Source: Phyllobates terribilis (lineage: Eukaryota). Taken from it: DNA of 64,000 nt. The position numbers and the translations under genes are program-made. The notes below the pieces were generated by a model. The model had not been told where the DNA came from, ran no database searches, and saw only the letters and a program-made list of their open reading frames with translations. The first letter of the stretch is position 1. Each line of letters opens with the position of its first letter. Below, in pieces: positions 1 through 38,730 of the stretch. The stretch is from positions 27,838,001 to 27,902,000 of the forward strand of contig NW_027362774.1 in the NCBI RefSeq assembly GCF_046119375.1, read 5' to 3'.

Positions 1-3000
1 TCGGGTTCGGTTCGGTTCGTCGAACACCGGGATGTTCGAGGAACTGTTCGTCGAACTGTTCGTCGAACACCTTAGAACACCGTTAAAACCAATGGCAGGC
101 AAACAAAAACACATAGAAACACATAGAAAACACCTGCAAAGGTGTCCAAAAGCTGAAAAACTGCTCAGAAGACACTCTCTTTAAAAAAGCCGGCCGGCAA
201 ATTCAGCAGCGGCATACACCGGTACCCGACAATTTAGACAAGAAGGAATAGAGCATCACACATAGATTAGATAGATAGAAACATGTCAGTCACATATATA
301 TGAAGTACAGTGACAGTGTTGGTTACTGCACTTGTCATTTAGTGTAAAGGATTTATTAAAAAAAATATTAGTGTTTTCATGCACCGTCTCTTTAAAAAAG
401 CCGGCCGGCAATTCAGCAGCGGTACCCGACAATTTATAACAGAAAGAATAGAGCTTCACACATAGATTAGATAGATAGAAACATGTCAGTCACATATATA
501 TGAAGTACAGTGACAGTGTTGGTTACTGCACTTGTCATTTAGTGTAAAGGATTTATTTAAAAAAATAATAGTGTTTTCATGCACCGTCTCTTTAAAAAAG
601 CCGGCCGGCAATTCAGCATCTGTACCCGACAATTTAGATCAGAAAGATAGAGCATCACACATAGATTAGATAGATAGAAACATGTCAGTCACATTTATAA
701 TAAGTACAGTGACAGTGTTGGTTACTGTACTTGTCATTTAGTGTTAAAATAAAGGATTTATTAAAATAAAAATTGGCGTGGGATCCCCCATAATTTTAGG
801 CTCTAGCGGAGGTTAAGCAGACAGCTGGGGCAGATGTTTGAAGCCTCGGAAGGGGGTAATACCCACGGAGCTTACCAGGCTACTAATATCAGCCCCCAGC
901 TGAATACTTAGCCTTTACTAGCTATTAAAAAGGGGGACCCCCCCAAAAAAATGACGTGGGGTCCCCCCTATTTTAATAGCTAGCAAAGGCTAAGCAGACA
1001 GCTGGGGGCTGATATTAATAGCCCAGGAAGGGTGCCATGAATATTGGCCTCCTCCCAGGCTAGAAACACCAGCCGTCAGCCGCCCCAGAAATGGCGCATT
1101 CATAGGATGCGCCAATTCTGGCACTTAGCCTCGCTCTTCCCACTGCCCTGTAGCGGTGGCAGTGGGGTAATAGGGTTGGGGTTGATGTCAGCTTATAATG
1201 CCAGCTGACATCAAGCCCAGGTTAGTAATGGAGAGGCGTCTATAAGACACCCCCATTACTAACCCCATAGTCAAAGTTAAAAAAAACACAAACACCCAGA
1301 ATAAAGTCCTTTAATTGAAATAAACACACAATTCTTTATTGTTCTAAATTAAACCATACTTACCGTCACGCCCATTCCAGCTGAAGCCAACGATCTCCTG
1401 TAATAAAAGAAAAATAATAAAGCAACATCATCCTTACCTTTCCATGGTTCCCAGGACAGCTTCAGCTCTGCTACATCGAGATGACTGGCTGGACTGCAGC
1501 AGAACGCCGCCATCCAGCCTGTCATCCCGCAGACACTGAGAAGCGCAGGCATGCTTGCGCTCCTCACTGTCTCGCTGTGACGGCATCCAGATGAGCCGAG
1601 GTCATGTCCAATGAACTCGGCTCACCTCATGCACGTCACTGACAGCGTGGGAAAATTCTCACGCTGAAGCGCTGAGTGCAGGAGAATTCTCCCACGCTGT
1701 CAGTGACGTGCAGGAGGTGAGCTGAGTTCATTGGACATGAGCTCACCTTATGCACGTCACTGACAGCGTGGGAAAATTCTCCTGCACTCAGCGCTTCAGC
1801 GTGGGAGAATTCTCACACTGAAGCGCTGAGTGCAGGAGAATTCTCCCACGCTGTCAGTGACGTGCAGGAGGTGAGCTGAGTTCATTGGACATGAGCTCAC
1901 CTTATGCACGTCACTGACAGCGTGGGAAAATTCTCCTGCACTCAGCGCTTCAGCGTGGGAGAATTCTCACGCTGAAGCGCTGAGTGCAGGAGAATTCTCC
2001 CACGCTGTCAGTGACGTGCAGGAGGTGAGCTGAGTTCATTGGACATGAGCTCACCTTATGCACGTCACTGACAGCGTGGGAGAATTCTCCTGCACTCACC
2101 GCTTCAGCGTGAGAATTTTCCCACGCTGTCAGTGACGTGCATGAGGTGAGCCGAGTTCATTGGACATGAACTCGGCTCATCTGGATGTCGTCACAGAGAG
2201 ACGCTGAGCAGCGCAAGCAAGCCTGCGCTTCTCAGTGTCTGCGGGATGACAGGCTGGATGGCAGCGTTCTGCTGCGGTCCAGCCTGTCATCTCGATGTAG
2301 CAGAGCTGAAGCTGTCGTGGGAACCATGGAAAGGTAAGGATGAGGTTGCTTTATTATTTTTCTTTTATTGCAGGAGATCGTTGGCTTCAGCTGGAATGGG
2401 CGTGACGGTAAGTATGGTTTAATTTAGAACAATAAAGGATTGTGTCTTTATTTCAATTAAAGGACTTTATTCTGGGTGTTTGTGTTTTTTTTAACTTTGA
2501 CTATGGGGTTAGTAATGGGGGTGTCTTATAGACGCCTCTCCATTACTAACCTGGGCTTGATGTCAGCTGGCATTATAAGCTGACATCAACCCCAACCCTA
2601 TTACCCCCTGCCACCGCACCAGGGCAGCGTGGAAGAGCGAGGCTAAGTGCCAGAATTGGCGCATCCTATGAATGCGCCATTTCTGGGGCGGCTGACGGCT
2701 GGTGTTTCTAGCCTGGGAGGGGGCCAATATTCATGGCTCCCTTCCTGGGCTATTAATATCAGCCCCCAGCTGTCTGCCTAGCCTTTGCTAGCTATTAAAT
2801 TAGGGGGGACCCCACGTCATTTTTTTGGGGGGTCCCCCATTTTAATAGCTAGTAAAGGCTATGTATTCAGCTGGGGGCTGATATTAGTAGCCTGGGAAGC
2901 TCCGTGGGTATTACCCCCTTCCCAGGCTTCAAACATCTGCCCCAGCCGTCTGCTTAACCTCCGCTAGAGCCTAAAATTAAGGGGAACCCCACGCCAATTT

Positions 3001-3871
3001 TTTTAATAATAAATCCTTTATTTTAATACTAAATGACAAGTACAGTAACCAACACTATCACTGTACTTCATATATATGTGACTGACATGTTTCTATCTAT
3101 CTAATCTATGTGTGAAGCTCTATTCTGTCTGTTATAAATTGTCGGGTACCGCTGCTGAATTGCCGGCCGGCTTTCTTAAAGAGACGGTGCATGAAAACTC
3201 TATTATTTTTTTTAATAAATCCTTTACACTAAATGACAAGTACAGTAATCAACACTGTCACTGTACTTCATATATATGTGACTGACATGTTTCTATCTAT
3301 CTAATCTATGTGTGAAGCTCTATTCTGTCTGTTATAAATTGTCGGGTACCGCTGCTGAATTGCCGGCCGGCTTTTTTAAAGAGACAGTGCATGAAAACAC
3401 AATTATTTTTTTTGATAAATCCTTTACGCTAAATGACAAGTACAGTAAGCAGCACTTTCACTGTACTTCGTATATATGTGACTGACATGTTTATATCTAT
3501 CTAATCTATGTGTGAAGCTCTATTCTTTCGGTTCTAAATTGTCGGGTACAGGTGTATGCCGCTGCTGAATTGCCGGCTTTTCATGTTTCACTGTGAGCAC
3601 AGTTCCCATCGATTTGGGCAATCACTGTAATGCCACAACCACCATGGCTGTGGCATTACAGTGAGTGGCAGACAATCCCTGCATGATTGGTGCTCTAAAT
3701 AGCGCCAGACATGCAGGACACGCTTTTGGTGCACGAACAGTTATCGAACATAACCTCGAACAGCCGAATTTTTTGCAAATCGTTCGGGTTCGTCGAACAA
3801 CTCGAACACCGCCCAAAACAGCTCGAATTTGAGATTGGCGAACAGTTCTAGTCGAACACCGCTCATCTCTA
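1..3871. mobile_element. Non-autonomous hAT-like/foldback element, left end outside the window, with a ~3.4-kb internal palindrome
   Basis: Right end ...GCTCATCTCTA (3861-3871; reverse complement TAGAGATGAGC, a hAT-like terminus as recalled); GTTCG/CGAAC-rich subterminal repeats at 1-70 and 3735-3860; arms ~177-1590 and ~2185-3590 are reverse complements, each with three ~190-200-bp tandem units; central nested palindromic repeats 1590-2185; no transposase ORF. Confidence 0.7.
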
Positions 3872-5276
3872 CTAATGACATCAACACCCTATATAAGGTG
3901 TGCTTAATTATTAGGCAACTTCCTTTCCTTTGGCAAAATGGGTCAGAAGAGAGATTTGACGGGCTCTGAAAAGTCCAAAATTGTGAGATGTCTTGCAGAG
4001 GGAGGCAGCAGTCTTGAAATTTCCAAACTTTTGAAGCGTGATCACCGAACAATAAAGCGTTTCATGGCAAATAGCCAACAGGGTCGCAAGAAGCGTGTTG
4101 GCCAAAACAGGCGCAAAATAACTGCCCATGAATTGAGGAAAATCAAGTGTGAAACTGCCAAGATGCCATTCGCCACCAGTTTTACCATATTTCAGAGCTG
4201 CAACATTACTGGAGTATCAAAAAGCACAAGGTGTGTGATACTCAGGGACATGGCCAAGGTAAGGAAGGCTGAAAAACCACCACCTTTGAACAAGAAACAT
4301 AAGATAAAACGTCAAGAATGGGCCAAGAAATATCTTAAGACTGATTTTTCAAAGGTTTTATGGACTGATGAAATGAGAGTGACTCTTGATGGGCCAGATG
4401 GATGGGCCAGAGGCTGGATCAGTAAAGGGCAGAGAGCTCCACTCCGACTCAGACGCCAGCAAGGTGGAGGTGGGGTACTGGTATGGGCTAGTATCATCAA
4501 AGATGAACTTGTGGGACCTTTTCGGGTTGAGGATGGAGTGAAGTTCAACTCCCAGACCTACTGCCAGTTTCTGGAAGACAACTTCTTCAAGCAGTGGTAC
4601 AGGAAGAAGTCGGTATCGTTCAAGAAAAACATGATTTTCATGCAGGACAATGCTCCATCACATGCATCCAACTACTCCACAACGTGGCTGGCCAGTAAAG
4701 GTCTAAAAGAAGAAAAAATAATGACATGGCCCCCTTGTTCACCTGATCTGAACCCCATAGAGAATCTGTGGTCCATCATAAAATGTGAGATCTACAGGGA
4801 GGGAAAACAGTACACCTCTGGGAACAGTGTCTGGGAGGCTGTGGTGGCTGCTGCACGCAATGTTGATCGAAAACAGATCAAGCAACTGACAGAATCTATG
4901 GATGGAGGCTGCTGAGTGTCATCGTAAAGAAAGGTGGCTATATTCATCACTAATTTTTTTGGTTTTTGCATGTCAGAAATGTTTATTTCTATATTTTGTG
5001 CACTGATATTGGTTTACCTGGTGAAAATAAACAAGTGAGATGGGATTATATTTGTTTTTTTATTAAGTTGCCTAATAATTCTGCACAGTAATAGTTACCT
5101 GCACAAACAGATATCCTCCTAAGATAGCCAAATCTAAAAAAAAAACCACTCCAACTTCCAAAAATATTAACCTTGGATATTTATGAGTCTTTTGGGTTGA
5201 TTGAGAACATAGTTGTTGATCAATAATAAAAATAATCCTCTAAAATACAACTTGCCTAATAATTCTGCACACAGTG
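3872..5276 (+). mobile_element. Tc1/mariner DD37E (TRT-like) transposon, left end missing at the junction with the foldback element
   Basis: Transposase ORF 3938-4915 (WTDE...QDNAPSH...DLNPIE; 37 residues between second D and E), frameshifted near the C-terminus (SMDGGC*); right TIR ...aataattctgcacacagtg followed by TA (5277-5278). Confidence 0.92.
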
Positions 5277-9156: not shown

Positions 9157-10641
9157 TCATAGAAACCGTCTCCTATGGAAAGGACGTTTGTAAGTGGGGA
9201 TAGACAAGCTAGGGAAACCTTTCTTTTTGTCACTAGCTTTATCCAGAAGTTCGTCCAGAACAGGCCCAAAAAGATGCTCTCTTTCACATGGAATAGTATA
9301 GAGTCTCGTTCTTGCTTGAATGTCACCTGGCCAACATTTCAGCCACAAGACTCTATGGGCTGAGTTGGACATGGCGACTGACCTCGCTGCCAATCTGACT
9401 GAATCCGCAGAGGCATCTGCCAGGAAGGCTGCTGCCCCCTGTAGGAGTGACATATCTGATAAAATCTCCTTCCTGGGGGTGTTATTTCTCAGATGGGATT
9501 CAAGTTGGTCCAGCCATATCATTAGGGACCTGGCGGTACAAGTAGCGGCAACCGCTGGTTTTACGGCCCCCGCAGATGTTTCCCAGGTCCCTTTGAGAAA
9601 AGTGTCAGCTTTCCTATCCAAAGGGTCCTTAAGAGCCCCCATATCATCAAAGGGGAGAGAGGATCGTTTAGATGCCTTAGCTATAGCCACATCTATTCTG
9701 GGGTCTTTCTCCCAGGACGAAGAAGCTGAGTCTTCAAAGGAATATTTTCTTTTAAAGAACAGAGGAAGAATACCCTTTCTCTCTGGCCTTTTCCATTCTC
9801 TACGTATCAAGCCCTGAATTTTATCGTTAAAGGGAAAACTTCTTCTTTTCCTCTGCCCCAGCCCCCTGAACATAATATCCTGGACTAATTTTTCCGGTCT
9901 GGCATCTGTAATACCCATGGTTGACCGAATTGCTTTAATTAAACCATCGACACCATTAATGGGAAAACCATTCTGACACGCACCACTATCTGAGGAAGTA
10001 GATGATGAAGAGGCTGCGTCGTCTGAGTCCAATTCATAAGCCGACGACAGGGAGTCATCAGGGGCTGGGGAGATCTCACGGTCTGTATCCACCTTTCCTT
10101 TAGTTTTTTTTGGCGAGGATTTTACTGGTTTCAGACTTGACCAAGGTTCTTAATCCCGAGGTGAGGCTAGGGGTCTCCTCTGCCAGCATTTGATTTATAC
10201 AGGACTGACACAATTTTTTGGGATATGAGTTGGGAAGGATGGAGTTACATAATGCACACTGAATATGCCTGGTCTTGGAGGTACACTTCTTCCCCTATTA
10301 AAATTAGAAGGGGAGAAGGGATACTCCATTACTAAGTGAACTTTCTCAAAGATCACTTACCCAGGTGGCTCAAAAAAGGCTAGTACCGATTTGGAGGAAG
10401 GACCCTTCTCAGCCGGGGGATCATCCCAGGAGGCTGCAGATTCGTCCATCCTGCTGGAGCCGTGATGACTGGACTTAGACACCGAACCTCTTTTTCCTGA
10501 GGACCGGGCATTACCAGAAACATGAGGGCGATGCACTTTTTGAGGCTCCCCAAACAGCCGCTGAGATAGTGGAGATGGCGGCTGCTCAACTTGCTGCTGC
10601 AGTAGCTGCTGCTGCTGTTGCTGCTCATTATCGGACTCCAT
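9157..10641 (-). pseudogene. DIRS gag-like ORF1, fragmented
   Basis: ORF 9157-10092 (…DPLDRKAD…LWLKCW…KKKGFP) and upstream fragment 10357-10641 with a CAG/poly-Q run; position 5' of RT inside the ITRs. Confidence 0.75.
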
Positions 10642-12179
10642 GATGAGGAGAACAAGCTGGGAAGCCCTGAACAGTGGTGCTTGGGCCAGTTAAGTAGCAC
10701 CTGTTCCACCCCTCAGCCACCTGATTTCAATTGAATACATTTCCCCATTTTCTTTTTTTTTTTTTTTACACAGGGATGCTTGGCGCCCCATCGCTGCGGT
10801 TAATACCGCACTTACAATTAGGTGCAGGTGACCGGACTTCCGGGTCTCGGTCACGTGATCGCCCCGAGGTGCGGTGACGTCATCGGGCCACGACTTACAG
10901 GAGGAGGCCGGAAGTGCGCGCCCGCACGAGCCTCGCGCCGGGAAGCTCCAGTTGCCGCCGCTCCAGGTAGGCTCTGCCAAGATCCATGAGCCTGCTACCC
11001 GGATTGGGGCGCAGCGTCGGATATCCAGTGCGCCAACCTCCGCTGGGTGTCGATGGGGACGGCATCCCACGCAACCCGTCTGTCTTCAGGGCGATGGTGG
11101 GCTCTGCCACCCAAGATAGGGGCGCAGTCCCACTGCAGTCCGGATCAGACCAGGGGCAGACTCCTCCACAGAAAGGGGCGCAAACCTGGCTGAAGCAGCT
11201 GATGAAAGGGCTGCCACCCCAGATAGGGGCGCTGCCTCCTGCTTATCCGGTGCAAAATATGCTGTGCCACTCCCAGATAGGGGTGCACCCACAAAGCAGA
11301 CGCTGGAGCTACAGATCCCAGATATGGGCGCTGCTCGACAGCCGTCGCCATCCGGTTCTTTCCACGAGCCTGAAATAGGTTCCCTCCATCAAGGACAGGA
11401 AACCAAAACTGAGGCGAGTGAGAGGGCCTCCCCTTTTCAGCCTGTAGGTTTCCTGTCCTTGGTGGGAGGATCCTCTCTCTCGTGGTGCTGTCATGGTCGA
11501 CCGATAAAATACATATAGCATATATGAAGTATTGGTCAAAATACGCCAGCTCGCAACCCGCGTCAAGGGTCCTCATACTTGCAAGTACGATCACCAAACT
11601 AAAAGCAAAGCCACAATAAATAAATATTTTTGCAACTAGCGAGTGGCTTCCAAGGGGGAAGCTGCCCCCATAAAATTTCACATTACTTCTTTTACTTCAG
11701 TTTCCAAACCCTAAAATGGTTAAAAGTGACCTGTTGATTCTTCTTCTGACCTGATCATTCAGTGGGAAGATGGCACAAACTAAATAAAGAAATCTATGGG
11801 GAGCCCAAAAAGACAGACTGAATACACCTGGTGTCTTTTCTAGAATTTTAAAAATGCCACACAAAAAAAAAAGCGGGTGTTTCCTGAAGCGGGTTCACCT
11901 GACTTCAAGACTATGTGCACACGTCGAGTATTTGGTTGCAGTAAGTTGTGAAAGGTTTCTGCCTCTCTTGGCAGCAAAAACGCTGAAGAAAAAACACACT
12001 TTTTTATGCGTTTTTATACAGCAATGAATGCTTTTTGGAGCTAAATAAAAATATTTGAAAAAAGAAATGTGGGACATCGCTTTAACCTTGGATTACCGTC
12101 GGACCTAGGGTGAGTATATTGGGTTAATTTAAATGCTTAAAGAATGTGTCTGTTGTATTTCAAATAAAGTGTTTTATTC

Positions 12180-13240
12180 TGTGTGTGTGTGTGTTTATTT
12201 AACTCTTTTCTTACAGGTTTAGTAATGAGGGTGTCTGGTTGAACCTAAGGGTTGGTGTCAGCAACACCTAATCCCATTACCCCTTTTCTCCTAATGCCAT
12301 TCAAATATGAAGTGTCATTTCAGGGGCAGCTGAGGGCTGCTATTTTTAGTATAGGAAAGGGCCATTAGGCCAACATGCTCCCTGGCTGTTTGGTTAGCCT
12401 TTAGGCTACGTCCCTACGATTAGCAACCAGCTGTGCTTTGGATAATACGACGCCCCCATTACTAACCCCATAGTTTAAATAAACTAAGTTTTAAATATAC
12501 ACACGGCCTTAAAAAAATCTTTAACTTGAAATAAAAGTCCACACGGTTTTAATAATTTATTTAAAAATAAAAAACACAGTATACTCACCTAACTCCTAAT
12601 CTGCTGAAGCCATTGTCACCTGTAAAACAAAATAACAAACAACCATATCCCTCACCGGTCCAATGTGGTGACGTAATCCAGAGTGTCCCATAAAGATCTG
12701 GGTCAGTTCTAGAGCAGTCACATCAATCACTGATGTGACTGTTGTAGAGGACAGCAGGCTACACACTGACACAGGAGTGTAATCTCTCCTGTATCTGTAT
12801 AGCGCTGAGCTGCCGAGAGAGAGGTCACATGAGTTCATCAGCCAATGATCAGCTTATGAGCTCCGGTGACTTCACTTTCTGCACCGCTGCTTGAGAATTT
12901 TCTCACGCAGGATCAGTGCAGTAAGTGAGGTCATCGGAGCTCATCAGCTGATGAACTCATGTAACCTCTGCACTATACAATGCTGGGAGCGATCACATTC
13001 CTGTCAGTAATGCTGGGTGATCAGATCGCCATGGGACACTCGGGATTTCGGCAGATAGGTGAGCATATGGTGTTTTTTATTTTAACATTCATTTAATTTT
13101 AACTTTTTTTCACTGCGAACACAGATGCAGGCTGATGACAGCTCCCATCAGCGGCACCTGCTCAATATCATCAGCGGCAGCAGTCATATGCTGATGGGAG
13201 GAGTAGTCTCTCATAAGCCGACGCCTGTCACAATTCTTTG
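12180..13240. mobile_element. Palindromic MITE-like element (second copy ~17650-18740)
   Basis: Internal inverted repeats (e.g. gatcagcttatgagctccggtgacttcacttt vs agtgaggtcatcggagctcatcagctg); shares cccccattactaacccc motif with the element at 1-3871. Confidence 0.55.
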
Positions 13241-14799: not shown

Positions 14800-17700
14800 T
14801 ATATATATACACACATGAGTAGATATTAAAAGTCACTGCGTCGTCCTTATCTGTCAATTACACTTCCAAAAGGGGTTGTCATCCAGCTTTCCTGAGCCCT
14901 GGAAAGCCGGATGACTATTTTTTCATTGTAATATTTTTGCAAAAAAAAACACAGCAAAAAGGGGCAGCAATGTTTACCTGCCCAGGTCTCAGAGCTAATG
15001 CACTACCAGGATGCAGCAAACCAATTTAATAAAGATGGCGGCAGCACAGGTGCAAAATACTGATGAAACAACCACTCACAACCTACCAGTTCATAGAGGG
15101 GGTGATTGCTTAGTATTCAAAAATTGTACACAAATAAGGCTTGTATAGGGCGCTGTTCACACATGGATAGTGAACAGTATCTGGCTTACCCGTCAATTAG
15201 TGACGCCCATGCTATTAGATTAGGTGGGCTGCCCGGTACTATCCAAGTGCACCCCATGAAGACAGACACCCTAGTTTACAATGCCAACACTGATGGGCCT
15301 GGCTGCACCCTGGAATAAAAAAGTGCAAAAAATACATACAGTACAGACCAAAAGTTTAGACACACCTTCTCATTTAAAGATTTTTCTGTATTTTCGTGAC
15401 TATGAAAATTGTACATTCACACTGAAGGCATCAAGACTATGAATTACCACATGTGGAATTATATACTTAACAAAAAAGTGTGAAACTACTGAAAATATGT
15501 CTTATATTCTAGGTTCTTCAAAGTAGCCACCTTTTTCTTTGATGACTGGTTTGCACACTCTTGGCATTTTCTTGATGAGCTTCAAGACGTAGTCACCGGA
15601 AATGGTTTTCACTTCACAGGTGTGCCCTGTCAGGTTTAATAAGTGGGATTTCTTGCCTTATAAATGGGGTTGGGACCATCAATTGTGTTGTGCAGAAGTC
15701 CGGTGGATACACAGCTGATAGTCCTACTGAATAGACTGTTAGAATTTGTATTACGGCAAGAAAAAAGGAGATAAGTAAAGAAAAACGAGTGGCCCTCATT
15801 ACTTTAAGAAATGAAGGTCAGTCAGTCTGAAAAATTGGGCAAACTTTGAAGGTGTCCCCAAGTGCAGTTGCAAAAACCATCAAGCGCTACAAAGAAACTG
15901 GCTCACATGAGGACCGCCCCAGGAAAGGAAGACCAAGAGTCACCTCTGCTTCTGAGGATAAGTTTATCCGAGTCACCAGCCTCAGAAATCGCAGGTTAAC
16001 AGCAGCTCAGATTAGAGACCAGGTCAATGCCACACAGAGTTCTAGCAGCAGACACATCTCTAAAACAACTGTTAAGAGGAGACTTTGTGCAGCAGGCCTT
16101 CATGGTAAAATAGCTGCTAGGAAACCACTGCTAAGGACAGGCAACAAGCAGAAGAGACTTGTTTGGGCTAAAGAACACAAGGAATGGACATTAGACCAGT
16201 GGAAATCTGTGCTTTGGTCTGATGAGTCCAAATTTGAGATCTTTGGTTCCAACCATCGTGTCTTTGTGCGACGCAGAAAAGGTGAACGGATGGACTCTAC
16301 ATGCCTGGTTCCCACCGTGAAGCATGGAGGAGGAGGTGTGATGGTGTGGGGGTGCTTTGCTGGTGACACTGTTGGGGATTTATTCAAAATTGAAGGCATA
16401 CTGAACCAGCATGGCTACCACAGCATCTTGCAGCGGCATGCTATTCCATCCGGTCTGCGTTTAGTTGGACCATCATTTCTTTTTCAACAGGACAATGACC
16501 CCAAACACACCTCCAGGCTGTGTAAGGGCTATTTGACCAAGAAGGAGAGTGATGGGGTGCTACGCCAGATGACCTGGCCTCCACAGTCACCAGACCTGAA
16601 CCCAATCGAGATGGTTTGGGGTGAGCTGGACCACAGAGTGAAGGCAAAAGGGCCAACAAGTGCTAAGCATCTCTGGGAACTCCTTCAAGATTGTTGGAAG
16701 ACCATTTCCGGTGACTACCTCTTGAAGCTCATCAAGAGAATGCCAAGATTGTGCAAAGCAGTCATCAAAGCAAAAGGTGGCTACTTTGAAGAACCTAGAA
16801 TATAAGACATATTTTCAGTTGTTTCACACTTTTTTGTTAAGTATATAATTCCACATGTGGTAATTCATAGTTTTGATGCCTTCAGTGTGAATGTACAATT
16901 TTCATAGTCATGAAAATACAGAAAAATCTTTAAATGAGAAGGTGTGTCCAAACTTTTGGTCTGTACTGTATAACATATATGAAGTATTGGTCAAAATGCG
17001 CCAGTTCGCAACCCGCGTCAAGGGTCCTCATACTTGCAAGTACGATCACTAAACTAAAAGCAAAGCCACAATAAATAAATATTTTTGCAACTAGCGAGTG
17101 GCTTCCAAGGTGGAAGCTGCCCCCATAAAATTTCACATTACTTCTTTTACTTCAGTTTCCAAACCCTAAAATGGTTAAAAGTGACCTGTTGATTCTTCTT
17201 CTGACCTGATCATTCAGTGGGAAGATGCCACAAACTAAATAAAGAAATCTATAGGGAGCCCAAAAAGACAGACTGAATACACCTGGCGTCTTTTCTAGAA
17301 TTTTAAAAATGCCACACAAAAAAAACGCGGGTGATTCCTGAAGCGGGTTCACCTGACTTCAAGGCTATGTGCACACGTCGAGTATTTGGTTGCAGTAAGT
17401 TGTGAAAAGTTTCTGTCTCTCTTGGCAGCAAAAACGCTGAAGAAAAAACACACTTCTTTATGCGTTTTTATACAGCAATGAATGCTTTTTGGAGCTAAAT
17501 AATGATATTTGAAAAAAGAAATGTGGGACATCGCTTTAACCCTTGGATTACCGTCGGACCTAGGGTGAGTATATTGGGTTAATTTAAATGCTTAAAGAAT
17601 GTGTCTGTTGTATTTAAATAAAGTGTTTTATTGTGTGTGTGTGTGTGTTTATTTAACTCTTTACTTACAGGTTTAGTAATGAGGGTGTCTGGTTGAACCT

Positions 17701-19263
17701 AAGGCTTGGTGTCAGCAACATCTAATCCCATTACGATGAAAAAAAGAATGGACCGCACCTCCAAAAACATACGTTGCCTCTCGGCAAAAATATATAAAAC
17801 TGAACATGAGGTTCTTAGTTTAACATCCTGATCAGACTGTATGAAGCCCACTGCCAAGTCACGGCAAACCTCATAGTGGGTCCTAACATTTCCTGCCTGA
17901 AAGGGAGCGGAGCCGTGCGCCAACCACCACCGCTGCGACAATGCATCAGCAGGGCGGGCGGCCTGGTGCCTCACAGCACCCATGCTGTAAGGCCGAGTCC
18001 CCATGACTCCAGGCCACGCTGCCCCACAAGCACGAAACTATAGCAACAATGGCCGACACACTGCACCAACACCACATGAAATGAGCATTGTGACTCACCT
18101 TCCTCAAGCTCTCAATTATAATAATTTTTTTACAAATAAAAAACACAGTATACTCACCTAACTCCTAATCTTCTGAAGCCATTGTCACCTGTAAAAAAAA
18201 ATAAAAAACAACCATATCCCTCACCGGTCCAATGTGGTGACGTAATCCAGATGTGACTGTTGTAGAGGACAGCAGGCTACATAATGACACAGGAGTGTAA
18301 TCTCTCCTGTGTCTGTATAGCGCTGAGCTGCCGAGAGAGAGGTCACATGACTTCATCAGCTAATGATCAGCTTATGAGCTCCGGTGACCTCACTTTCTGC
18401 ACCGCTGCTTGTGAATTTTCTCACGCAGGATCAGTGCAGTAAGTGAGGTCATCGGAGCTCATCAGCTGCACTATACAACCCTGCACTATACAATGCTGGG
18501 AGCGATCACATTCCTGTCAGTGATGCTGGGTGATCGGATCGCCATGGGACACTCGGGATTACGGCGGATAGGTGAGTATATGGTGTTTTTTATTTTAACA
18601 TTCATTTAATTTTAACTTTTTTTCACTGCGAGCACAGATGCAGGCGGATGACAGCTCCCATCAGCGGCACCTGCTCACTATCATCAGCAGCAGCAGTCAT
18701 ATGCTGATGGGAGGAGTAGTCTCTTATAAGCCGAAGCCTGTCACAATTCTTTGTGCATTTTTGACCCATTGACTTCAAGGGAGTCAGTCAAAAATTTGCA
18801 GCAAATACGCAAATATTTTTATACCTGCGTTTTTGCTGCGGATTTAACTGACTCAATTGAAGTCAATGGGTGAAAAACGCGGCAAAACGCACAAAGAATT
18901 GACATGCTGCAGATTTAAACGCAATGCAAACCCTAAGGGTATGTGCACACGGTGCGGATTTGCTGCTGCGTTTTTATGCAGCGTCAAAACCGCAGCGGCC
19001 AGATGTTACAGCATAGTGGATGGGATTTCTAGAAATCCCATGTCCACTATGCGTCTTTGTGCACCTGCGGATCACCTGTGGAAACTGACATGAAGCGCGT
19101 TTTTCAGATCCGCAGCATGTCTATTTCTCTTGCAGAAGCTCATGCGGATTTTCCCCATAGACTTGCATTAGATGAGGATGCGTAAAAACTGCATGTGTGC
19201 TTTGTGTGAGTTTCCGCAGCGGAAACGCATACAAAAACACTACGTGATGATCAATAAAGTTTG
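14800..19263. repeat. Segmental tandem duplication, copy 2 (segment A, DD38E insertion, segment B)
   Basis: Near-identical to copy 1 apart from substitutions, a ~40-bp deletion near 18250 and a non-matching block (~17715-18120 vs ~12255-12540). Confidence 0.9.
15339..16968 (+). mobile_element. Tc1-related DD38E (Intruder-like) transposon, full length (1630 bp), decayed start
   Basis: TA duplication on both sides; ~200-bp TIRs CAGTACAGACCAAAAGTTT...; transposase ORF 15846-16805 (WSDE...QDNDPKH...DLNPIE, 38-residue spacing) ending inside the right TIR; upstream ACG in place of the expected ATG and an in-frame TGA near 15828. Confidence 0.94.
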
Positions 19264-27900: not shown

Positions 27901-30900
27901 GAAATGGTCCTGTGCTATGAGCGCCGACCACTAGGTGGCGCTCATAGCGACAAGATCATGACAACCACAGGCGTCTGCTGCAGACCCTGGGTTGTCATGC
28001 CCACCCATCGGCGACCTGCGATCACGTGACGGGGTCGCCGGTGGGCGGGGCTTATGACGCGCTACCCGGAAGCGCGCGTTAAATGTTGCTGTCAGAGATT
28101 AACAGCGGCATTTAACATGTTAACAGCCGCGGGTGGATCGTGATTCCACCCGCGGCTGTTGCGGGCACATGTCAGCTGTAAGAATCAGCTGACATGTGCT
28201 CCGTTCAGTGAGGGCTCAGCGCAGCAGCCCTCACTGAACGGAGGGTACGCAAATGTGCGTACTAATACGTCCCCGGTATTTAAGGGGTTAAAATTGAGTC
28301 TATTTTAGTGGTATTATAGGATTTATGTATTTTATAATTCATATAGGTCATATTAGTGTTAAGTGATAAAATTGTTGAGACAGTGAAAGGCTTAAAATTG
28401 TACCCCCAGCTCAAAGCGATGATATATCAATAGGACATGCCATCACCTTACAAATGGTGACGGTCCAACCTTCATTAAAGCTGTGCTGTGGTTCCCCTGA
28501 ATTGATGTACCGACGGTGGTTCGGGTGCTGCGCTCCATGTACCAACGGTGGTTCGGGTGCTGCGCTCCATGTACCGACGGTGGTTCGGGTGCTGCGCTCC
28601 ATGTACCGACGGTGGTTCGGGTGCTGCGCTCCATGTACCGACGGTGGTTCGGGTGCTGCGCTCCATGTACTGACGGTGGTTTGGGTGCTGCGCTCCATGT
28701 ACCGACGGTGGTTCGGGTGCTGCGCTCCATGTCCCGACGGTGGTTCGGGTGCTGCGCTCCATGTCCTGACGGTGGTTCGGGTGCTGCGCTCCATGTACTG
28801 ACGGTGGTTCGGGTGCTGCGCTCCATGTACTGACGGTGGTTCGGGTGCTGCGCTCCATGTACTGACGGTGGTTCGGGTGCTGCGCTCCATGTACTGACGG
28901 TGGTTCGGGTGCTGCGCTCCATGTACTGACGGTGGTTCGGGTGCTGCGCTCCATGTACTGACGGTGGTTCGGGTGCTGCGCTCCATGTCCTGACGGTAGT
29001 TCGGGTGCTGCGCGTCATGTACAGACGGTGGTTTCACTTTTTACTGTATTTAATTGTCCCCTTAGGAGTCTTGAAGCTGTGATCGTTTGATTGTCTGTGC
29101 TATTCATAGTAGGGCTTCAGCACTGCTATGTATCGCAAAAACTCAAAATTATGTTCTCCTTTGAGGCAGTGTTCACAGTTGATTCACCATGACAGGCATG
29201 GGGGTCTTCTGCAGATCCCCGGCTGTCATCACAACCCATCGGCGCCCCCAGATCACGTGACAGTTGCGCCGATGGGCGGTATTTGTGACGTGCTTCCAGA
29301 CGGCACGTGTTAAATCCCGCTGTCAGAGATTGACAGCGGGATTTAACCGTTTAACAGCCGCAGACGGAGCTGCAGTATTTTGGATGTTTTCCTATCCGTA
29401 GGAGGTGCTGCTGATGATGGAGGTCCCTGACGTTTGGACTCTCGGAGCAGTCAATCAATGAAATCGACGGTACAATTCTCACCGCACAAATCAGAAAATA
29501 ATAATGCTGCAAAATCAGAAGAAAGTTCAGCGTCTTGCACTCACCGTTCCTCTCCTGATAAGCGGACAGGATGTTGATCAGATCGTAAGAACTTGCGAAT
29601 GGGCTCGTTCCATTGATAACAGAAACCTGCCACGTGGAATCAGAAAAAAAAACAACCAACCATCGTTACTATTCCTGCTCTGTAATCCCCACATCTGGCC
29701 CCCAATCCGCCTCATTTCCATATGTCCAAAACAGACACAGCTCCGCTACGTCCCCCGACTGTAGTGTCTTACGTTGTAGGTGGTGTCCAGGCCCTGGTGT
29801 CTCAGAGGTCGTCTCTGCTGAAGCCTCAGGTCTCCATTGATGTAAAGCTTGGCTCCGGGAACAGGAGACGTATACTGGACGAACGCCATGCTCTGCATAG
29901 CAAATGTGGACATCCTCTGCAGGAATCGCCAAATACAGAAATATATTACATCCCCCATCATCTCATGAAAGTGACCAGAAAATATACTTACAGTATTGAC
30001 TATAACTCTTCTCCCGTTTTATGTATACAGCTCTCCTACAGACCAATGTGTCTGCATGGTTACAGACGGACAAGCCAAGCCCGTGTGGGAGCTAAACTGG
30101 CATTAATTCATTCCTCTTCTCACTGATCTACTGATGACTGCACCGTCAGACTACAAATAGGGCTTGTTTGTAGTCTGTCACCATGGAGACGCATAGAGGT
30201 GTTGGGAAAAAAAAAGGTGAGAGAAAAGCGTCTTGCTAGAGACAGGTAAAATTAGAATTATTTAATGTCCCTTACAAGATCTAGATCCCAAAGCATTATA
30301 AACGCAATATGAATAAAAATAAAATACTTCTACTCACCTCACAGCCCATCTCTCTAACTCATACATGAAAGACTGTGGCCCACAAGGTGGTTGGTTATAT
30401 TTGGCCCGCGAAACCAGAACCCTGCCACCCCTATGTGGGCCCACTATACTGTGTTGAGGACTATGTGGGGCCCATTACACTGTATGGAGGACTATGTGGG
30501 ACCATTATACTGTATGGAGGACTATGTGGGCCCACTATACTGTATGGAGGACTATGTGGGGCCCATTATACTGTATGGAGGACTATGTGGGGCCCATTAT
30601 ACTGTATGGAGGACTATGTGGGGCCCACTATACTGTAAGGAGGACTATGTGGGCCCACTATACTGTATGGAGGACTATGTGGGGCCCATTACACTGTATG
30701 GAGGACTATGTGGGGCCATTATACTGTATGGAGGACTATGTGAGGCCATTATACTGTATGGAGGACTATGTGGGCCCATTATACTGTATGGAGGACTATG
30801 TGGGCCCATTATACTGTATGGAGGACTATGTGGGGCCCACTATACTGTATGGAGGACTATGTGAGGCCATTATACTGTATGGAGGACTATGTGGGCCCAT

Positions 30901-33900
30901 TATACTGTATGGAGGACTATGTGGGCCCATTATACTGTATGGAGGACTATGTGGGCCCATTATACTGTATGGAGGACTATGTGGGGCCCACTATACTGTA
31001 TGGAGGACTATGTGAGGCCATTATACTGTATGGAGGACTATGTGGGCCCATTATACTGTATGGAGGACTATGTGGGCCCATTATACTGTATGGAGGACTA
31101 TGTGGGCCCACTATACTGTATGGAGGACTATGTGGGGCCCATTATACTGTATGGAGGACTATGTGGGGCCCATTATACTGTATGGAGGACTATGTGGGGC
31201 CCACTATACTGTAAGGAGGACTATGTGGGCCCACTATACTGTATGGAGGACTATGTGGGGCCCATTACACTGTATGGAGGACTATGTGGGGCCATTATAC
31301 TGTATGGAGGACTATGTGAGGCCATTATACTGTATGGAGGACTATGTGGGCCCATTATACTGTATGGAGGACTATGTGGGCCCATTATACTGTATGGAGG
31401 ACTATGTGGGGCCCACTATACTGTATGGAGGACTATGTGAGGCCATTATACTGTATGGAGGACTATGTGGGCCCATTATACTGTATGGAGGACTATGTGG
31501 GCCCATTATACTGTATGGAGGACTATGTGGGCCCATTATACTGTATGGAGGACTATGTGGGGCCCACTATACTGTATGGAGGACTATGTGAGGCCATTAT
31601 ACTGTATGGAGGACTATGTGGGCCCATTATACTGTATGGAGGACTATGTGGGCCCATTATACTGTATGGAGGACTATGTGGGGCCCACTATACTGTATGG
31701 AGGACTATGTGAGGCCATTATACTGTATGGAGGACTATGTGGGCCCATTATACTGTATGGAAGACTATGTGGGGCCCATTACACTGTATGGAGGACTATG
31801 TGGGGCCCATTATTCTGTATGGAGGACTATGTGGGGCCCATTATTCTGTATGGAGGACTATGTGGGGCCCACTATACTGTATGGAGGACTATGTGGGGCC
31901 CATTATACTGTATGGAGGACTATGTGGGCCCATTATTCTGTATGGAGGACTATGTGGGCCCATTATTCTGCATGGAGGACTATGTGGGGCCCATTATTCT
32001 GCATGGAGGACTATGTGGGGCCCATTATTCTGTATGGAGGACTATGTGGGGCCCATTATACTGTATGGAGGACTATGTGGGGCCCATTATACTGTATAGA
32101 GGACTATGTGGGCCCATTATTCTGTATAGAGGACTATGTGGGCCCATTATTCTGTATGGAGGACTATGTGGGGCCCATTATACTGTATAGAGGACTATGT
32201 GGGCCCATTATTCTGTATGCAGGACTATGTGGGGCCCATTATACTGTATGCAGGACTATGTGGGGCCCATTATACTGTATGCAGGACTATGTGGGGCCAT
32301 TATTCTGTATGGAGGACTATGTGGGGCCATTATTCTGTATGGAGGACTATGTGGGGCCATTATACTGTATGGAGGACTATGTGGGGCCATTATACTGTAT
32401 GGAGGACTATGTGGAGCCCATTATACTGTAGGGAGGACTATGTGGGGCCCATTATTCTCTATGCAGGACTATGGTGGGGCCATTATTCTGTACGGAGGAC
32501 TATGTGGGGCCATTATTCTGTATAGAACACTTTGTGGGGCCCATTATACTGTATGGAGGACTATGTGGGGCCATTATTCTGTATGGAGGACTTTGTGGGG
32601 CCCATTATACTGTATGGAGGACTATGTGGGGCCCATTATTCTGTATGGAGGACTATGTGGGGCCCATTATTCTGTATGGAGGACTATGTGGGGCCCATTA
32701 TTCTGTATGGAGGACTATGTGGGGCCCATTACTCTGTATGGAGGACTATGTGGGGCCCATTAATCTGTATGGAGGACTATGTGGGGCCCATTATACTGTA
32801 TGGAGGACTATGTGGGGCCCATTATTCTGTATGGAGGACTATGTGGCGCCCATTATTCTGTATGGAGGACTATGTGGGGCCCATTATTCTGTATAGAGGA
32901 CTATGTGGGGCCCATTATTCTGTATAGAGGACTATGTGGGCCCATTATTCCGTATGGAGGACTATGTGGGCCCATTATTCCGTATGGAGGACTATGTGGG
33001 GCCCATTATACTGTATAGAGGACTATGTGGGCCCATTATTCTGTATGCAGGACTATGTGGGGCCATTATTCTGTATGGAGGACTATGTGGGGCCATTATT
33101 CTGTATAGAGGACTATGTGGGGCCATTATTCTGTATAGAGGACTATGTGGGGCCATTATTCTGTATGGAGGACTTTGTGGGGCCAATTATACAGTATGGA
33201 GGACTATGTGGGGCCATTATTCTGTATGGAGGACTATGTGGGGCCATTATTCTGTATGGAGGACTTTGTGGGGCCAATTATACAGTATGGAGGACTATGT
33301 GGGGCCATTATTCTGTATGGAGGACTATGTGGGGCCATTATACTGTATGGAGGACTATGTGGGGCCATTATACTGTATGGAGGACTTTGTGGGGCCCATT
33401 ATTCTGTATACTGGTTGGCCTGCGATTTTGTCCAAATTTTTCATTTTGGCCCTATGTGGGTTGGCGTTTGACATCCCTGATCTAGCCCCTCCGCTCCTCT
33501 CCGCCACCTGTCCAGTCTATAGACTGCTGCCGCTCGTGTCACTCAAGGACAAGACTTCAGATCTGATGAGATTCCGGAAGGTTCTGGGAAAGACAAATAT
33601 ACTGTATACTAGCTATGAACCCGTTCTACGCCCGGGTGGCGAGCATTTTTTATTGGTATATGGTCTCCCATGCTGGTATTTGTGCTGCCCAATCCTGTTC
33701 CTCCATCCTGTTATGTGCTGCCCTCATCCCTATCCTGGTATGCATGGCACCCAACCTCTCATCCTGGTATGCATGGCCCCCTCAACCCTATCCTTGTATG
33801 CATAGCACCACATATTCCTATTCTGGTATGCATGGTACCCCTCATCCCTATTCTGGTATGCATGGTACCCCTCATCCCTATTCTGGTATACATGGTACCC

Positions 33901-36689: not shown

Positions 36690-38730
36690 TACTCCCCTAC
36701 ACCACTATATACCTCTACTCCTCCTCCCCTGTCCCTCTATATACCCCCTCCTCCCCCCATGTCCCTCTATATACCCCCCTCCTCCCCCACGTCCCTCTAT
36801 ATACCCCCCTCCTCCCCCACGTCCCTCTATATACCCCCCTCCTCCCCCACGTCCCTCTATATACCCCCCTCCTCCCTTCCAGTACCTCTATATACCCCCT
36901 CCTCCTACCCTGTCCCACTATATACCACCTCCTCCCTTCCTGTCCCTCTATATACCCCTCCTCCTCCCCTGTCCCTCTATATACCCCTCCTCCTCCCCTG
37001 TCCCTCTATATACCCCCTCCTCCCTTCCTGTCCCTCTATATACCCCCTCCTCCCCCGTCCCTCTATATACCCCCTCCTGTCCCTCTATATACCCCCTCCT
37101 GTCCCTCTATATACCCCCTCCTGTCCCTCTATATACCCCCTCCTCCCCTCCTGTCCCTCTATATACCCCCCTTCTCCCTTCCTGTACCTCTATGTACCCC
37201 CTCCTCCTCCCCTGTACCTCTATGTACCCCCTCCTCCCTTCCTGTCCCTCTATATACCCCCTCCTCCCTTCCTGTCCCTCTATATACCCCCTCCTCCCCC
37301 CGTTCCTCTATATACCCCCTCCTCCCCCCCGTCCCTCATGTACCCCCCTCCTCCCTTCCTGTCTCTCTATATACCCCCTCCTCCCCCCTATATACCCCCT
37401 CCTCCCTTCCTGTCCCTCTATATACCCCCCTCCTCCCTTCCTGTACCCCTATATACCCCCCTCCTCCCTTCCTGTACCCCTTCCTGTCCCTCTATATACC
37501 CCCTCCTCCCCCCTGTCCCTCTATATACCCCCTCCTCCCATCCTGTCCTTCTATATACCCCCTCCCCCTATATACCCCCTCCTCCCTTCCTGTCCCTCTA
37601 TATACCCCCTCCTCCCATTCTGTCCTTCTATATACCCCCTCCCCCCTATATACCCCCTCCTCCCTTCCTGTCCCTCTATATACCCCCTCCTCTGTACCTC
37701 CCTCCTCCCTTCCTGTCTCTCTATATACCCCCTCCTCCCCCCCCTATATACCCTCTCCTCCCTGTCCCTCTATATACCCCCTCCTCCCTTCCTGTCCCTC
37801 TATACACCCCCCTCCTCCCTTCATGTACCCCCTCCTCCCTTCCTGTCCCTCTATATACCCCCTCCTCCCCCTGTCCCTCTATGTACCCCCCTCCTCCTCC
37901 CCCCGTGTCCCTCTATATACCCCCTCCTCCTCCCCTGTCCCTCTATACACCCCCCTCCTCCCTTCCTGTCCCTCTATATACCCCCTCCTCCCCCCCTATA
38001 TACCCTCTCCTCCCTTCCTGTCCCTCTATACACCCCCCTCCTCCCTTCCTGTACCCCCCTCCTCCTCCCCTGTACCTTTATGTACCCCCTCCTCCCTTCC
38101 TGTCCCTCTATACACCCCCCTCCTCCCTTCCTGTCCCTCTATATACCCTCTCCTCCCTTCCTGTCCCGCTATACACCCCCCTCCTCCCTTCCTGTACCCC
38201 CCTCCTCCTCCCCTGTACCTCTATACACCCCCCTCCTCCCTTCCTGTCCCTCTATATACCCCCTCCTCCCCCCCTGTCCCTCTATGTACCCCCCTCCTCC
38301 TCCCCCCCTGTCCCTCTATGTACCCCCCTCCTCCTCCCCCCCTGTCCCTCTATGTACTCCCCTCCTCCTCCCCCCCTGTCCCTCTATGTACTCCCCTCCT
38401 CCTCCCCCCTGTCCCTCTATGTACTCCCCTCCTCCTCCCCCCTGTCCCTCTATGTACCCCCCTCCTCCTCCCCCCGTGTCCCTCTATATACCCCCTCCTC
38501 CTTCCCCCGTGTCCCTCTATATACCCCCTCCTCCTTCCCCCCTATATACCCCCTCCTCCCTTCCTGTCCCTCTACACACCCCCCTCCTCCCTTCCTGTCC
38601 CTCTATATACCCCCTCCCCCCCCCCCTATATACCCTCTCCTCCCTTCCTGTCCCTCTATACAACCCCCTCCTCCCTTCCTGTACCCCCCTCCTCCTCCCC
38701 TGTACATCCATATACCCCCCACCTATATCC
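36690..38730. repeat. C-rich degenerate minisatellite upstream of the TMEM231 ATG (source of the 700-840 aa Pro-rich ORFs)
   Basis: Unit ~ctgtccctctatataccccctcctcccttc; extreme C/G strand skew. Confidence 0.95.

What the first reader, a model, noticed from the sequence alone, without database searches (positions are those of the whole stretch)
1364..2420. Giant foldback element with symmetric, outward-facing splice cassettes around a TGACGT-rich core
Seen: each arm of the ~3.4-kb palindrome carries, reading away from the centre, a consensus donor (AAG|GTAAGG at 2334; mirror at 1437), a 40-nt pyrimidine-rich spacer ending in CAG (2373; mirror 1398), a 34-nt exon-like block and a second consensus donor (ACG|GTAAGT at 2408; mirror 1363). 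The centre (1590-2185) is an array of nested palindromes repeating GTCAGTGACGTGC (CRE/E-box-like cores). Inference: the architecture looks like a portable bidirectional promoter plus first-exon donor unit that could launch spliced transcripts into flanking DNA in either orientation, or let the element be spliced out of host transcripts. The 40-nt spacer is shorter than typical vertebrate introns, so the cassette may act as competing sites rather than a real intron.
Basis: partly seen in the sequence, partly recalled or inferred. Interest (0 to 1): 0.72.

Follow-up and report, generated by a model that had tools for sequence, protein, structure and literature searches.

The report
Frog foldback transposon with mirrored splice-like module
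This is one copy of a very abundant, protein-less palindromic jumping gene of a poison frog; it carries a promoter-like centre and outward-pointing splice-signal look-alikes on both arms, but I found no evidence that these signals are used.

Summary
A 3.37-kb palindrome has arms at 200-1877 and 1894-3571 that are 94% complementary. Its centre is a 154-bp palindromic tandem array with eight exact GTCAGTGACGTGC motifs. Each arm carries, facing outward, ACCATGG AAAG|GTAAGG, a 40-nt pyrimidine-rich stretch ending in CAG, a 34-nt block, and ACG|GTAAGTAT.

The palindrome sits between CGAAC-rich subterminal DNA and a right terminus reading TAGAGATG inward. This fits a non-autonomous hAT-type element; the left end lies outside the window. 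Thousands of variant contigs per position in four public runs show very high copy number.

A second palindromic family in the window (12068-13105 and its duplicate) is about 64% identical and keeps GT, AG and GT. Every GGTRAGTAT in the window belongs to these two families. However, one arm of the second family lacks the mini-intron. The mirrored ORFs differ almost only by amino-acid changes. 40 nt is shorter than any validated vertebrate intron. No splice joint appeared in the listed joints.

My reading is a foldback transposon carrying an inherited, mirrored transcription-unit-like module of unproven function. The scan has already noted foldback hAT elements, and this outward-donor design, elsewhere in this genome.

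The parts
1..175 (.). Left subterminal region of the host element, cut by the window edge. It is rich in CGAAC/GTTCG (9 motifs in 1-64). The left terminus and any target-site duplication lie outside the window.
   Evidence: loose ends at 175 show other copies diverge here
200..1877 (-). Left arm of the palindrome; its modules read outward on the - strand.
1894..3571 (+). Right arm of the palindrome; its modules read outward on the + strand.
220..744 (.). 200-bp subrepeat x2.6 in the left arm (mirror: 3028-3549).
3028..3549 (.). 200-bp subrepeat x2.6 in the right arm.
1590..2185 (.). Core: alternating inverted 77-nt half-units (154-bp unit x3 at 1643-2111). Each has a CATTGG/CCAAT loop and GTCAGTGACGTGC stems. 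The centre of the whole palindrome (1878-1893) is one of these loops.
2186..2325 (+). Leader-like stretch made of two hairpins (mirror 1446-1585 on the - strand).
   Evidence: read directly; a 50-aa ORF across it differs at many residues between the arms
2326..2415 (+). Splice-like cassette, right arm: ATG 2326; donor 1 GT 2334; 40-nt spacer 2334-2373; 34-nt block 2374-2407; donor 2 GGTAAGTAT 2407-2415.
1356..1445 (-). Splice-like cassette, left arm (mirror image): donor 1 at 1437, spacer ends at 1398, donor 2 at 1363.
2416..2506 (+). AT-rich stretch after donor 2 with AATAAA (2431-2436) and ATTAAA (2456-2461). Homologous to 12118-12216 of family 2, where it ends in a TTCTTACAG acceptor-like site.
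2507..2553 (.). Hairpin GGTTAGTAATGGGGG...CCATTACTAACC (mirror 1218-1264). It is the best conserved block shared with family 2.
3577..3723 (.). Non-palindromic internal stretch with a small hairpin of its own.
   Evidence: loose ends at 3724
3724..3872 (.). Right subterminal region (9 CGAAC/GTTCG motifs) and terminus ...CGCTCATCTCTA, which reads TAGAGATGAGCG inward. The end is placed at 3870-3873.
   Evidence: (loose ends at 3871 and 3873)
12068..13105 (.). Second, smaller palindromic family (F2). It has a core with a CCAAT hairpin (12820-12969), outward ATG blocks, and GGTGAGTAT or GGTGAGCAT donors at 12109(+), 12589(-) and 13058(+). The mini-intron is present only on the left arm. It lies in a different transposon backbone.
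17523..18610 (.). Duplicate of F2 in a segmental duplication, with an unrelated insertion at about 17735-18130.

Best explanation
Window 1 to about 3872 is the larger part of one copy of a very high-copy, non-coding cut-and-paste DNA transposon of a poison frog. It is most likely a non-autonomous hAT-type element moved in trans by a transposase that recognises its TAGAGATG-type terminus and CGAAC subterminal repeats. Its interior is a foldback: one half was copied in reverse, probably by template switching or hairpin-primed repair, on top of older nested hairpins and tandem subrepeats. The splice-like cassette belongs to a module that predates the foldback: a CCAAT/TGACGTG-rich core, a hairpin leader, an ATG, a donor, and an AT-rich stretch with poly(A) hexamers. 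It appears twice and faces outward only because the arm is mirrored. The module looks like the relic of a promoter, first exon and first intron of some ancestral transcription unit. It is not protein-coding now, and its 40-nt 'intron' is too short to be spliced. Shown here: the palindrome, the motifs, the high copy number, the right terminus, and homology with a second family. Inferred: the hAT superfamily, the origin of the module, and the mechanism of palindrome formation. Transcribed copies would fold into long double-stranded RNA, and one run shows an editing-like A>G/T>C excess consistent with that.
For: Palindrome and nested repeats. No ORF above 72 aa inside the element. The mirrored 50-aa ORFs (1434-1586 on -, 2185-2337 on +) differ at about 9 residues for about 12 nucleotide differences, so they are not under coding constraint. 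CGAAC/GTTCG clusters occur next to the palindrome only at 1-64 and 3734-3853. The terminus at 3870-3873 is shown by loose ends that run into different flanks, and by contigs of the flanking Tc1-type element that join at 3871. TAGAG fits the hAT YARNG rule (my own knowledge). Copy number: 98,411 and 387,352 contigs from two DNA runs lie on the 4 kb, and small runs of 143-181 million letters also hold it. Both arms carry the same subfamily variants at polymorphic mirror sites (1100/2671 and 1365/2406). Family 2 shares the module at 64% identity inside a different backbone. All 7 GGTRAGTAT in the window lie in these modules, against 1.03 expected. hAT-Ac makes up about 5% of Phyllobates terribilis reads (PMC12208295). 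Earlier unchecked scan notes describe many hAT foldbacks in this genome. Editing-like bias in run X10: A>G plus T>C account for 34 of 78 changed places, against 40 of 177 in the other runs, Fisher p = 0.001; site 1537 T>C is at 76% in X10 and about 0 in the DNA runs.
Against: The left terminus and the target-site duplication are outside the window. The hAT assignment therefore rests on one end, the subterminal repeats, and unchecked earlier notes. The outer flanks (1-175 versus 3577-3872) are not mirror images, so the palindrome could be a separate element nested in a hAT shell. Donor 2 (GGTRAGTAT) is the most invariant block in the seven-sequence alignment: 7 of the 24 invariant columns fall in it. 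That hints at constraint rather than a dead relic. X10 is only guessed to be RNA.
Confidence: 0.72

Rival explanations
1. The core is a working bidirectional promoter, and each arm supplies a first exon and donors. Copies would then launch spliced chimeric transcripts into whatever lies outside them. Here the right arm points at an apparently intact Tc1-type transposase ORF at 3938-4915.
For: CCAAT and TGACGTG motifs are repeated in both orientations. A Kozak ATG lies about 165 nt downstream of the last CCAAT. Donor 2 pairs with U1 over 9 consecutive bases. GT/AG/GT is kept in family 2, and GGTRAGTAT is the best conserved block. An unchecked note reports the same design in other MITEs of this genome.
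Against: No start, joint or loose end supporting it appears in the listed rows, though those lists are truncated and built from contigs only. Retention of the splice dinucleotides between families has P about 0.07. The right arm of family 2 lacks the mini-intron. The leader is two strong hairpins. In the RNA-like run the two strongest sites specific to that run are both T>C (1537 and 2842). That implies minus-strand RNA running through both arms, not outward transcription only.
Confidence: 0.12
2. The signals act on host or read-through transcripts rather than on the element's own. One version: the acceptor at 2373 and donor at 2408 define a 34-nt cassette exon in whichever orientation the palindrome sits in an intron. 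Another version: the U1-perfect donor placed 23 nt upstream of AATAAA mutes the element's own poly(A) signals, which would make intronic copies tolerable.
For: An acceptor-like site, a 34-nt block (31 nt in family 2) and a strong donor are in the right order for exon definition. AATAAA and ATTAAA follow donor 2 within 55 nt. A palindrome presents one sense copy on each strand.
Against: There is no RNA evidence. 34 and 31 nt would shift the reading frame, so exonisation would be harmful rather than selected. The U1/poly(A) idea rests on my general knowledge of U1-mediated suppression of polyadenylation, not on any test here.
Confidence: 0.08
3. The hairpins are the functional part: transcribed copies feed small-RNA pathways (siRNA, piRNA or miRNA-like) or are merely ADAR substrates, and the splice-like motifs are incidental.
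For: There are extreme hairpins. Many sub-threshold matches to miRNA-precursor models fall in the core, all below gathering scores. Run X10 shows an editing-like A>G/T>C excess.
Against: No Rfam family reaches its threshold; the matches reflect hairpin shape only. No small-RNA data were available. X10 is not on record as RNA.
Confidence: 0.06
4. Assembly artefact (a foldback chimera of long reads), or a local palindromic duplication of a single-copy gene's 5' end.
For: The element touches the window edge, and no contig spans the centre.
Against: The arms differ at 101 positions, whereas artefactual foldbacks are near-identical. The centre falls in a periodic array that is symmetric in itself. 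Every part of the stretch is present in thousands of variant contigs in five independent studies. A second palindromic family is present in the same window.
Confidence: 0.02

Closest known systems
Non-autonomous hAT elements (maize Ds, vertebrate hAT-N and hAT MITEs), including the foldback hAT copies already noted in this frog genome by this scan
   Same: No transposase. The terminus fits YARNG. Short subterminal repeats are clustered at both ends. Copy number is very high. The interior is rebuilt by inverted duplication. From my own knowledge, Ds elements are also known to be spliced out of host pre-mRNA through donor and acceptor sites they carry.
   Different: The left terminus and the 8-bp target duplication could not be seen. 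The interior carries a conserved outward-facing ATG/donor module on both arms around a CCAAT/TGACGTG array. I do not know of that for Ds or hAT-N families.
Drosophila Foldback (FB) elements and Galileo (long inverted arms built from tandem subrepeats; PMC3688188 appeared in the search results, and I did not read it)
   Same: Kilobase-long inverted arms containing tandem subrepeats (200 bp x2.6 per arm), no coding capacity, and strong cruciform or hairpin potential.
   Different: The termini and subterminal motifs look hAT-like, not FB- or P-like. Here the whole interior is palindromic, down to a periodic central array. No homology was tested.
Transposon-borne promoters and first exons that create chimeric transcripts (for example the L1 antisense promoter and LTR-driven first exons; my own knowledge)
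   Same: Promoter-like motifs followed by a short exon-like block and a strong donor pointing into flanking DNA.
   Different: No transcription start or junction has been shown here. The unit is carried by a DNA transposon and is mirrored.
Inverted-repeat transposon pairs as ADAR substrates (for example inverted Alu pairs; my own knowledge)
   Same: A long intramolecular duplex is expected when the element is transcribed. One run shows an A>G/T>C excess.
   Different: It is a single element rather than a pair of insertions. Editing is not proven, because there is no matched DNA and RNA.

Membership tests
hAT superfamily (non-autonomous member) | Short terminal inverted repeats beginning YARNG | tested here: inconclusive
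   The right end reads TAGAG(ATGAGCG) inward, with the end placed at 3870-3873 by loose ends. The left end is outside the window, so inverted-repeat pairing could not be checked.
hAT superfamily (non-autonomous member) | 8-bp target-site duplication | not testable with these tools
   The left junction lies beyond window position 1. No other copy could be fetched.
hAT superfamily (non-autonomous member) | Clusters of short subterminal repeats (transposase-binding type) at both ends | tested here: met
   9 CGAAC/GTTCG in 1-64 and 9 in 3734-3853, against 1 per kb in the window as a whole.
hAT superfamily (non-autonomous member) | hAT transposase (BED/DDE/dimerisation domain) encoded, which is needed only for autonomous members | tested here: not met
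   The longest ORF inside 1-3872 is 72 aa. The element can only be non-autonomous.
Foldback-type element (structural class) | Long inverted arms composed partly of tandem subrepeats, with little or no unique middle | tested here: met
   Arms 200-1877 and 1894-3571 at 94%, a 16-nt centre, and 200-bp x2.6 subrepeats in each arm.
Foldback-type element (Drosophila FB family proper) | Sequence homology of the termini to FB, and a 9-bp target duplication | not tested
   No FB reference sequence was compared, and the left end is missing.
Functional intron/exon cassette | Consensus 5' and 3' splice sites in the right order | tested here: met
   Two donors with 8 of 9 matches to MAG|GTRAGT and a pyrimidine-rich CAG acceptor. 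This is the only such triplet in the window.
Functional intron/exon cassette | Intron long enough for the vertebrate spliceosome | tested here: not met
   40 nt (36 nt in family 2), against a shortest validated human intron of 43 nt (PMC4463651).
Functional intron/exon cassette | Junction reads or contigs in RNA | tested here: inconclusive
   No 2333>2374 joint and no loose end at 2407 or 1364 among the listed rows. Only 15 of 160 joints and 24 of 3235 loose ends are shown, the data are contigs only, and no run is on record as RNA.
Functional intron/exon cassette | Splice dinucleotides conserved above background | tested here: inconclusive
   Within family 1 almost nothing in the cassette varies at 10% or more; only 2406/1365 and 2370/1401 do. 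Between families, 6 of 6 positions are kept at 64% background identity, P = 0.07. Donor 2 is the most invariant block in 7 sequences, of which only about 4 are independent.
RNA polymerase II promoter | Mapped transcription start sites | not testable with these tools
   Only motif content (CCAAT, TGACGTG) is seen. No raw RNA reads were on offer.

The most novel reading that the evidence does not exclude
The core plus the outward ATG/U1-site module is a working, portable unit carried by several unrelated MITE backbones in poison frogs. Each of its thousands of copies would then be a small bidirectional promoter that either launches spliced transcripts into neighbouring DNA or uses U1 binding to silence its own poly(A) signals. 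That would be a genome-wide source of chimeric first exons in a 10-Gb-class genome.
Probability: 0.12. Interest if true: 0.7.

Novelty: new variant of a known kind. Interest (0 to 1): 0.38.

Why it matters
Poison-frog genomes are swollen by transposons that current libraries classify poorly. If this family is simply a foldback hAT derivative, it is one more example of how hairpin-prone DNA transposons rebuild themselves. It is also a likely source of double-stranded RNA. If the conserved outward donor module is active, thousands of copies would supply alternative promoters, first exons or cryptic exons near genes. That would be a notable case of a DNA transposon spreading a transcription unit. 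The data here do not decide this, but they define the exact junctions and start windows to look for.

Tried and rejected
1. I tried to fetch other genomic copies for a conservation test, and everything came back blank. This covered exact-product look-ups of two element ORFs, a protein word search with the 72-aa read-through ORF, two metagenome DNA scans, and one viral-contig scan. These collections evidently hold no frog repeats, so the blanks say nothing about rarity.

2. Penelope-like element, snRNA or spliced-leader gene: no hammerhead, snRNA or SL RNA match. Only sub-threshold miRNA-hairpin look-alikes appeared.

3. Protein-coding exons: rejected. The mirrored ORFs differ mostly by amino-acid changes. 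In family 2 the homologous blocks run into stop codons.

4. The CGAAC cluster at 28.5-29.0 kb is not a related end. It is an unrelated 32-bp minisatellite.

5. Depth profiles were not used as evidence. For example, X10 shows a tenfold drop after 2412. The depths are per-contig means, and the tool warns against ranking by them.

The exons were only read in place.

Full report
**What is in the sequence**

Window 200-3571 is a near-perfect palindrome. Four collinear pairs of arms cover it: 200-647/3124-3571, 647-950/2820-3123, 928-1140/2631-2843 and 1164-1877/1894-2607. They are 94-97% complementary around a 16-nt centre. A global alignment of the right arm with the reverse complement of the left gives 101 differences in 1701 columns.

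Each arm holds a 200-bp subrepeat x2.6. The centre is a 154-bp unit repeated three times at 98% identity. That unit is itself two inverted 77-nt halves, so the whole core (1590-2185) is symmetric at several scales. As single-stranded DNA it folds at -349.8 kcal/mol, with z = -47.8. GTCAGTGACGTGC occurs eight times exactly, four per strand, against 0.05 expected. The hairpin loops between these motifs carry CATTGG, which is CCAAT on the other strand.

**The splice-like cassette**

All motifs are at the stated coordinates.

- Right arm: ACC ATG GAA AG|GTAAGG, with GT at 2334.
- A 40-nt pyrimidine-rich stretch follows, ending TTGCAG at 2373.
- A 34-nt block runs from 2374 to 2407.
- Then comes ACG|GTAAGTAT, with GT at 2408.
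- Mirror images lie at 1437, 1398 and 1363.

Donor-like 9-mers occur at 0.39 per kb per strand. This is the only donor/acceptor/donor triplet in the 64 kb. My rough expectation is 0.3 per window, so on its own it could be chance. The mirror copy is not independent.

**What the element is**

No ORF inside exceeds 72 aa. CGAAC/GTTCG motifs cluster at 1-64 and 3734-3853, directly outside the palindrome.

Contigs from public runs place an element boundary at 3870-3873. Copies run on into different flanks after 3873. Contigs of the neighbouring Tc1-type element join at 3871. Read inward, the end is TAGAGATGAGCG, which fits the hAT YARNG rule (my own knowledge).

The flank is a Tc1/mariner element with a 325-aa DDE_3 ORF. 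The window starts inside the left subterminal region, so the left terminus and the target duplication cannot be seen.

Two DNA runs place 98,411 and 387,352 contigs on the 4 kb. Runs of only 143-181 million letters also hold more than half of the sampled words. The family, or its modules, is therefore present in very many copies.

Earlier notes of this scan identify the genome as a poison frog and describe several protein-less hAT foldbacks in it. I treat those as leads only. Published read-based estimates give hAT-Ac about 5% of Phyllobates terribilis reads (PMC12208295).

An assembly artefact is unlikely for three reasons:

- The arms differ at about 6% of positions.
- At the polymorphic mirror sites 1100/2671 and 1365/2406 both arms carry matching variants.
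- A second palindromic family lies in the same window.

**The second family**

A relaxed search with the right arm found homologous pieces at 12109-12236 (+), 12445-12662 (-) and 12821-12958 (core). The duplicate copy is at 17564-17690, and a further piece at 18130-18260 was read directly.

This family (F2) is a roughly 0.5-1 kb palindrome. It has a CCAAT-bearing hairpin core and outward ATG blocks followed by GGTGAGTAT. It sits in a different transposon backbone, with TATGTGCACACG-type ends and GCGTTTTT motifs. An unchecked note says such designs recur in unrelated MITEs of this genome.

F1 and F2 are 64% identical over 256 columns. They keep GT, AG and GT, with a 36-nt spacer and a 31-nt block in F2. 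The probability of keeping all six positions at that identity is 0.07.

In a seven-sequence alignment, of which about four sequences are independent, GGT.AG.AT of donor 2 holds 7 of the 24 invariant columns. All seven GGTRAGTAT in the window belong to these modules, against 1.03 expected. Donor 2 is therefore the best conserved part of the module, together with the GGTTAGTAATGGGGG hairpin stem.

Three points count against a required cassette:

- The right arm of F2 lacks the end of 'exon 1', the mini-intron and most of 'exon 2'. This is an indel of about 70 nt between GGATTACG and GATTAGG.
- The F2 blocks run into stop codons.
- The mirrored 50-aa ORFs of F1 differ at about nine residues for about twelve nucleotide changes.

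**RNA evidence**

No listed run is on record as RNA. I laid four runs on 1-4000. The listed joints contain no 2333>2374 skip. The listed loose ends contain none at 2407 or 1364. Only 15 of 160 joints and 24 of 3235 loose ends are printed, and all the data are contigs, so this is weak negative evidence.

Within family 1, the only places in the cassette that vary at 10% or more among the listed rows are 2406/1365 and 2370/1401. The first is the -2 position of donor 2, a CpG where most copies read TG. The second is the -4 position of the acceptor, which is also a difference between the arms. The splice dinucleotides are therefore no better conserved than their neighbours.

Run X10, guessed to be RNA, shows A>G plus T>C at 34 of 78 changed places, against 40 of 177 in the other three runs (Fisher p = 0.001). 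Position 1537 reads C in 76% of its depth and in about 0% of the DNA runs. This is what ADAR editing of a long hairpin RNA would look like. It needs matched DNA and RNA to confirm. The two strongest sites specific to X10 (1537 and 2842) are both T>C. That points to minus-strand RNA crossing both arms, meaning read-through rather than purely outward transcription.

**Conclusion**

The most likely identity is a high-copy, non-autonomous, hAT-type foldback transposon.

The cassette is part of an older module that resembles a promoter, first exon, donor and first intron, and that the foldback mirrored. The 40-nt spacer is below the shortest validated vertebrate introns (43 nt; PMC4463651), so it cannot be a true intron.

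Whether donor 2 and the core still act remains open. Possible roles are as a promoter, as a U1 site next to poly(A) hexamers, or as a cryptic 34-nt exon. The local conservation of GGTRAGTAT is the one observation that a pure relic does not explain well.

**Leads that went nowhere**

- No other copies could be fetched from any collection.
- Rfam gave only sub-threshold hairpin look-alikes.

Noticed in passing
window 3938-4915 (+): An uninterrupted 325-aa Tc1/mariner transposase ORF (DDE_3 1.7e-15, HTH_Tnp_Tc3_2) starts 65 nt beyond the foldback element's right end, on the strand that the right-arm cassette points along. The foldback seems to have inserted into the Tc1 element's 5' region.
   Followed up: partly
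window 1-4000, run X10 (e.g. 1537, 2842): Editing-like excess of A>G and T>C differences in the one run guessed to be RNA. 1537 T>C is at 76% there and near 0 in the DNA runs. This is possibly ADAR editing of the hairpin transcript.
   Followed up: partly
window 1365 and 2406: This copy keeps CpG at the -2 position of donor 2 on both arms, while about 65-70% of the family depth reads TpG/CpA. The arms therefore share a minority, undecayed subfamily state; 1100/2671 behave the same way.
   Followed up: partly
window 12554-13093 and 18134-18595: The two arms of the second palindromic family are asymmetric. Only the left arm has the mini-intron and second block; the right arm has an indel of about 70 nt between short GATTA repeats.
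   Followed up: yes
window 28505-29033: A 32-bp minisatellite, 16.5 copies at 96% identity. It is rich in GGTTCGGG and unrelated to the transposon's CGAAC ends.
   Followed up: yes
window 30431-33409 and 36705-38719: Two large 30-bp-unit minisatellites, about 98 and 68 copies. The second is C-rich and open in three frames for over 2 kb. This explains the long overlapping ORFs that have no Pfam match.
   Followed up: partly
window 9160-10092 (-): A 311-aa ORF with a LAP2alpha domain match (1.6e-09), in a transposon-rich stretch. I did not check whether it is a host exon or a captured or transposon-associated domain.
   Followed up: no
window 1-4000, joints 2291/2297/2298 > 2072: Contigs from three runs join the leader hairpin to a core unit in the opposite order, with a few letters between (CCATCC). 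This suggests flip-flop isomers or rearranged module orders among family members.
   Followed up: no
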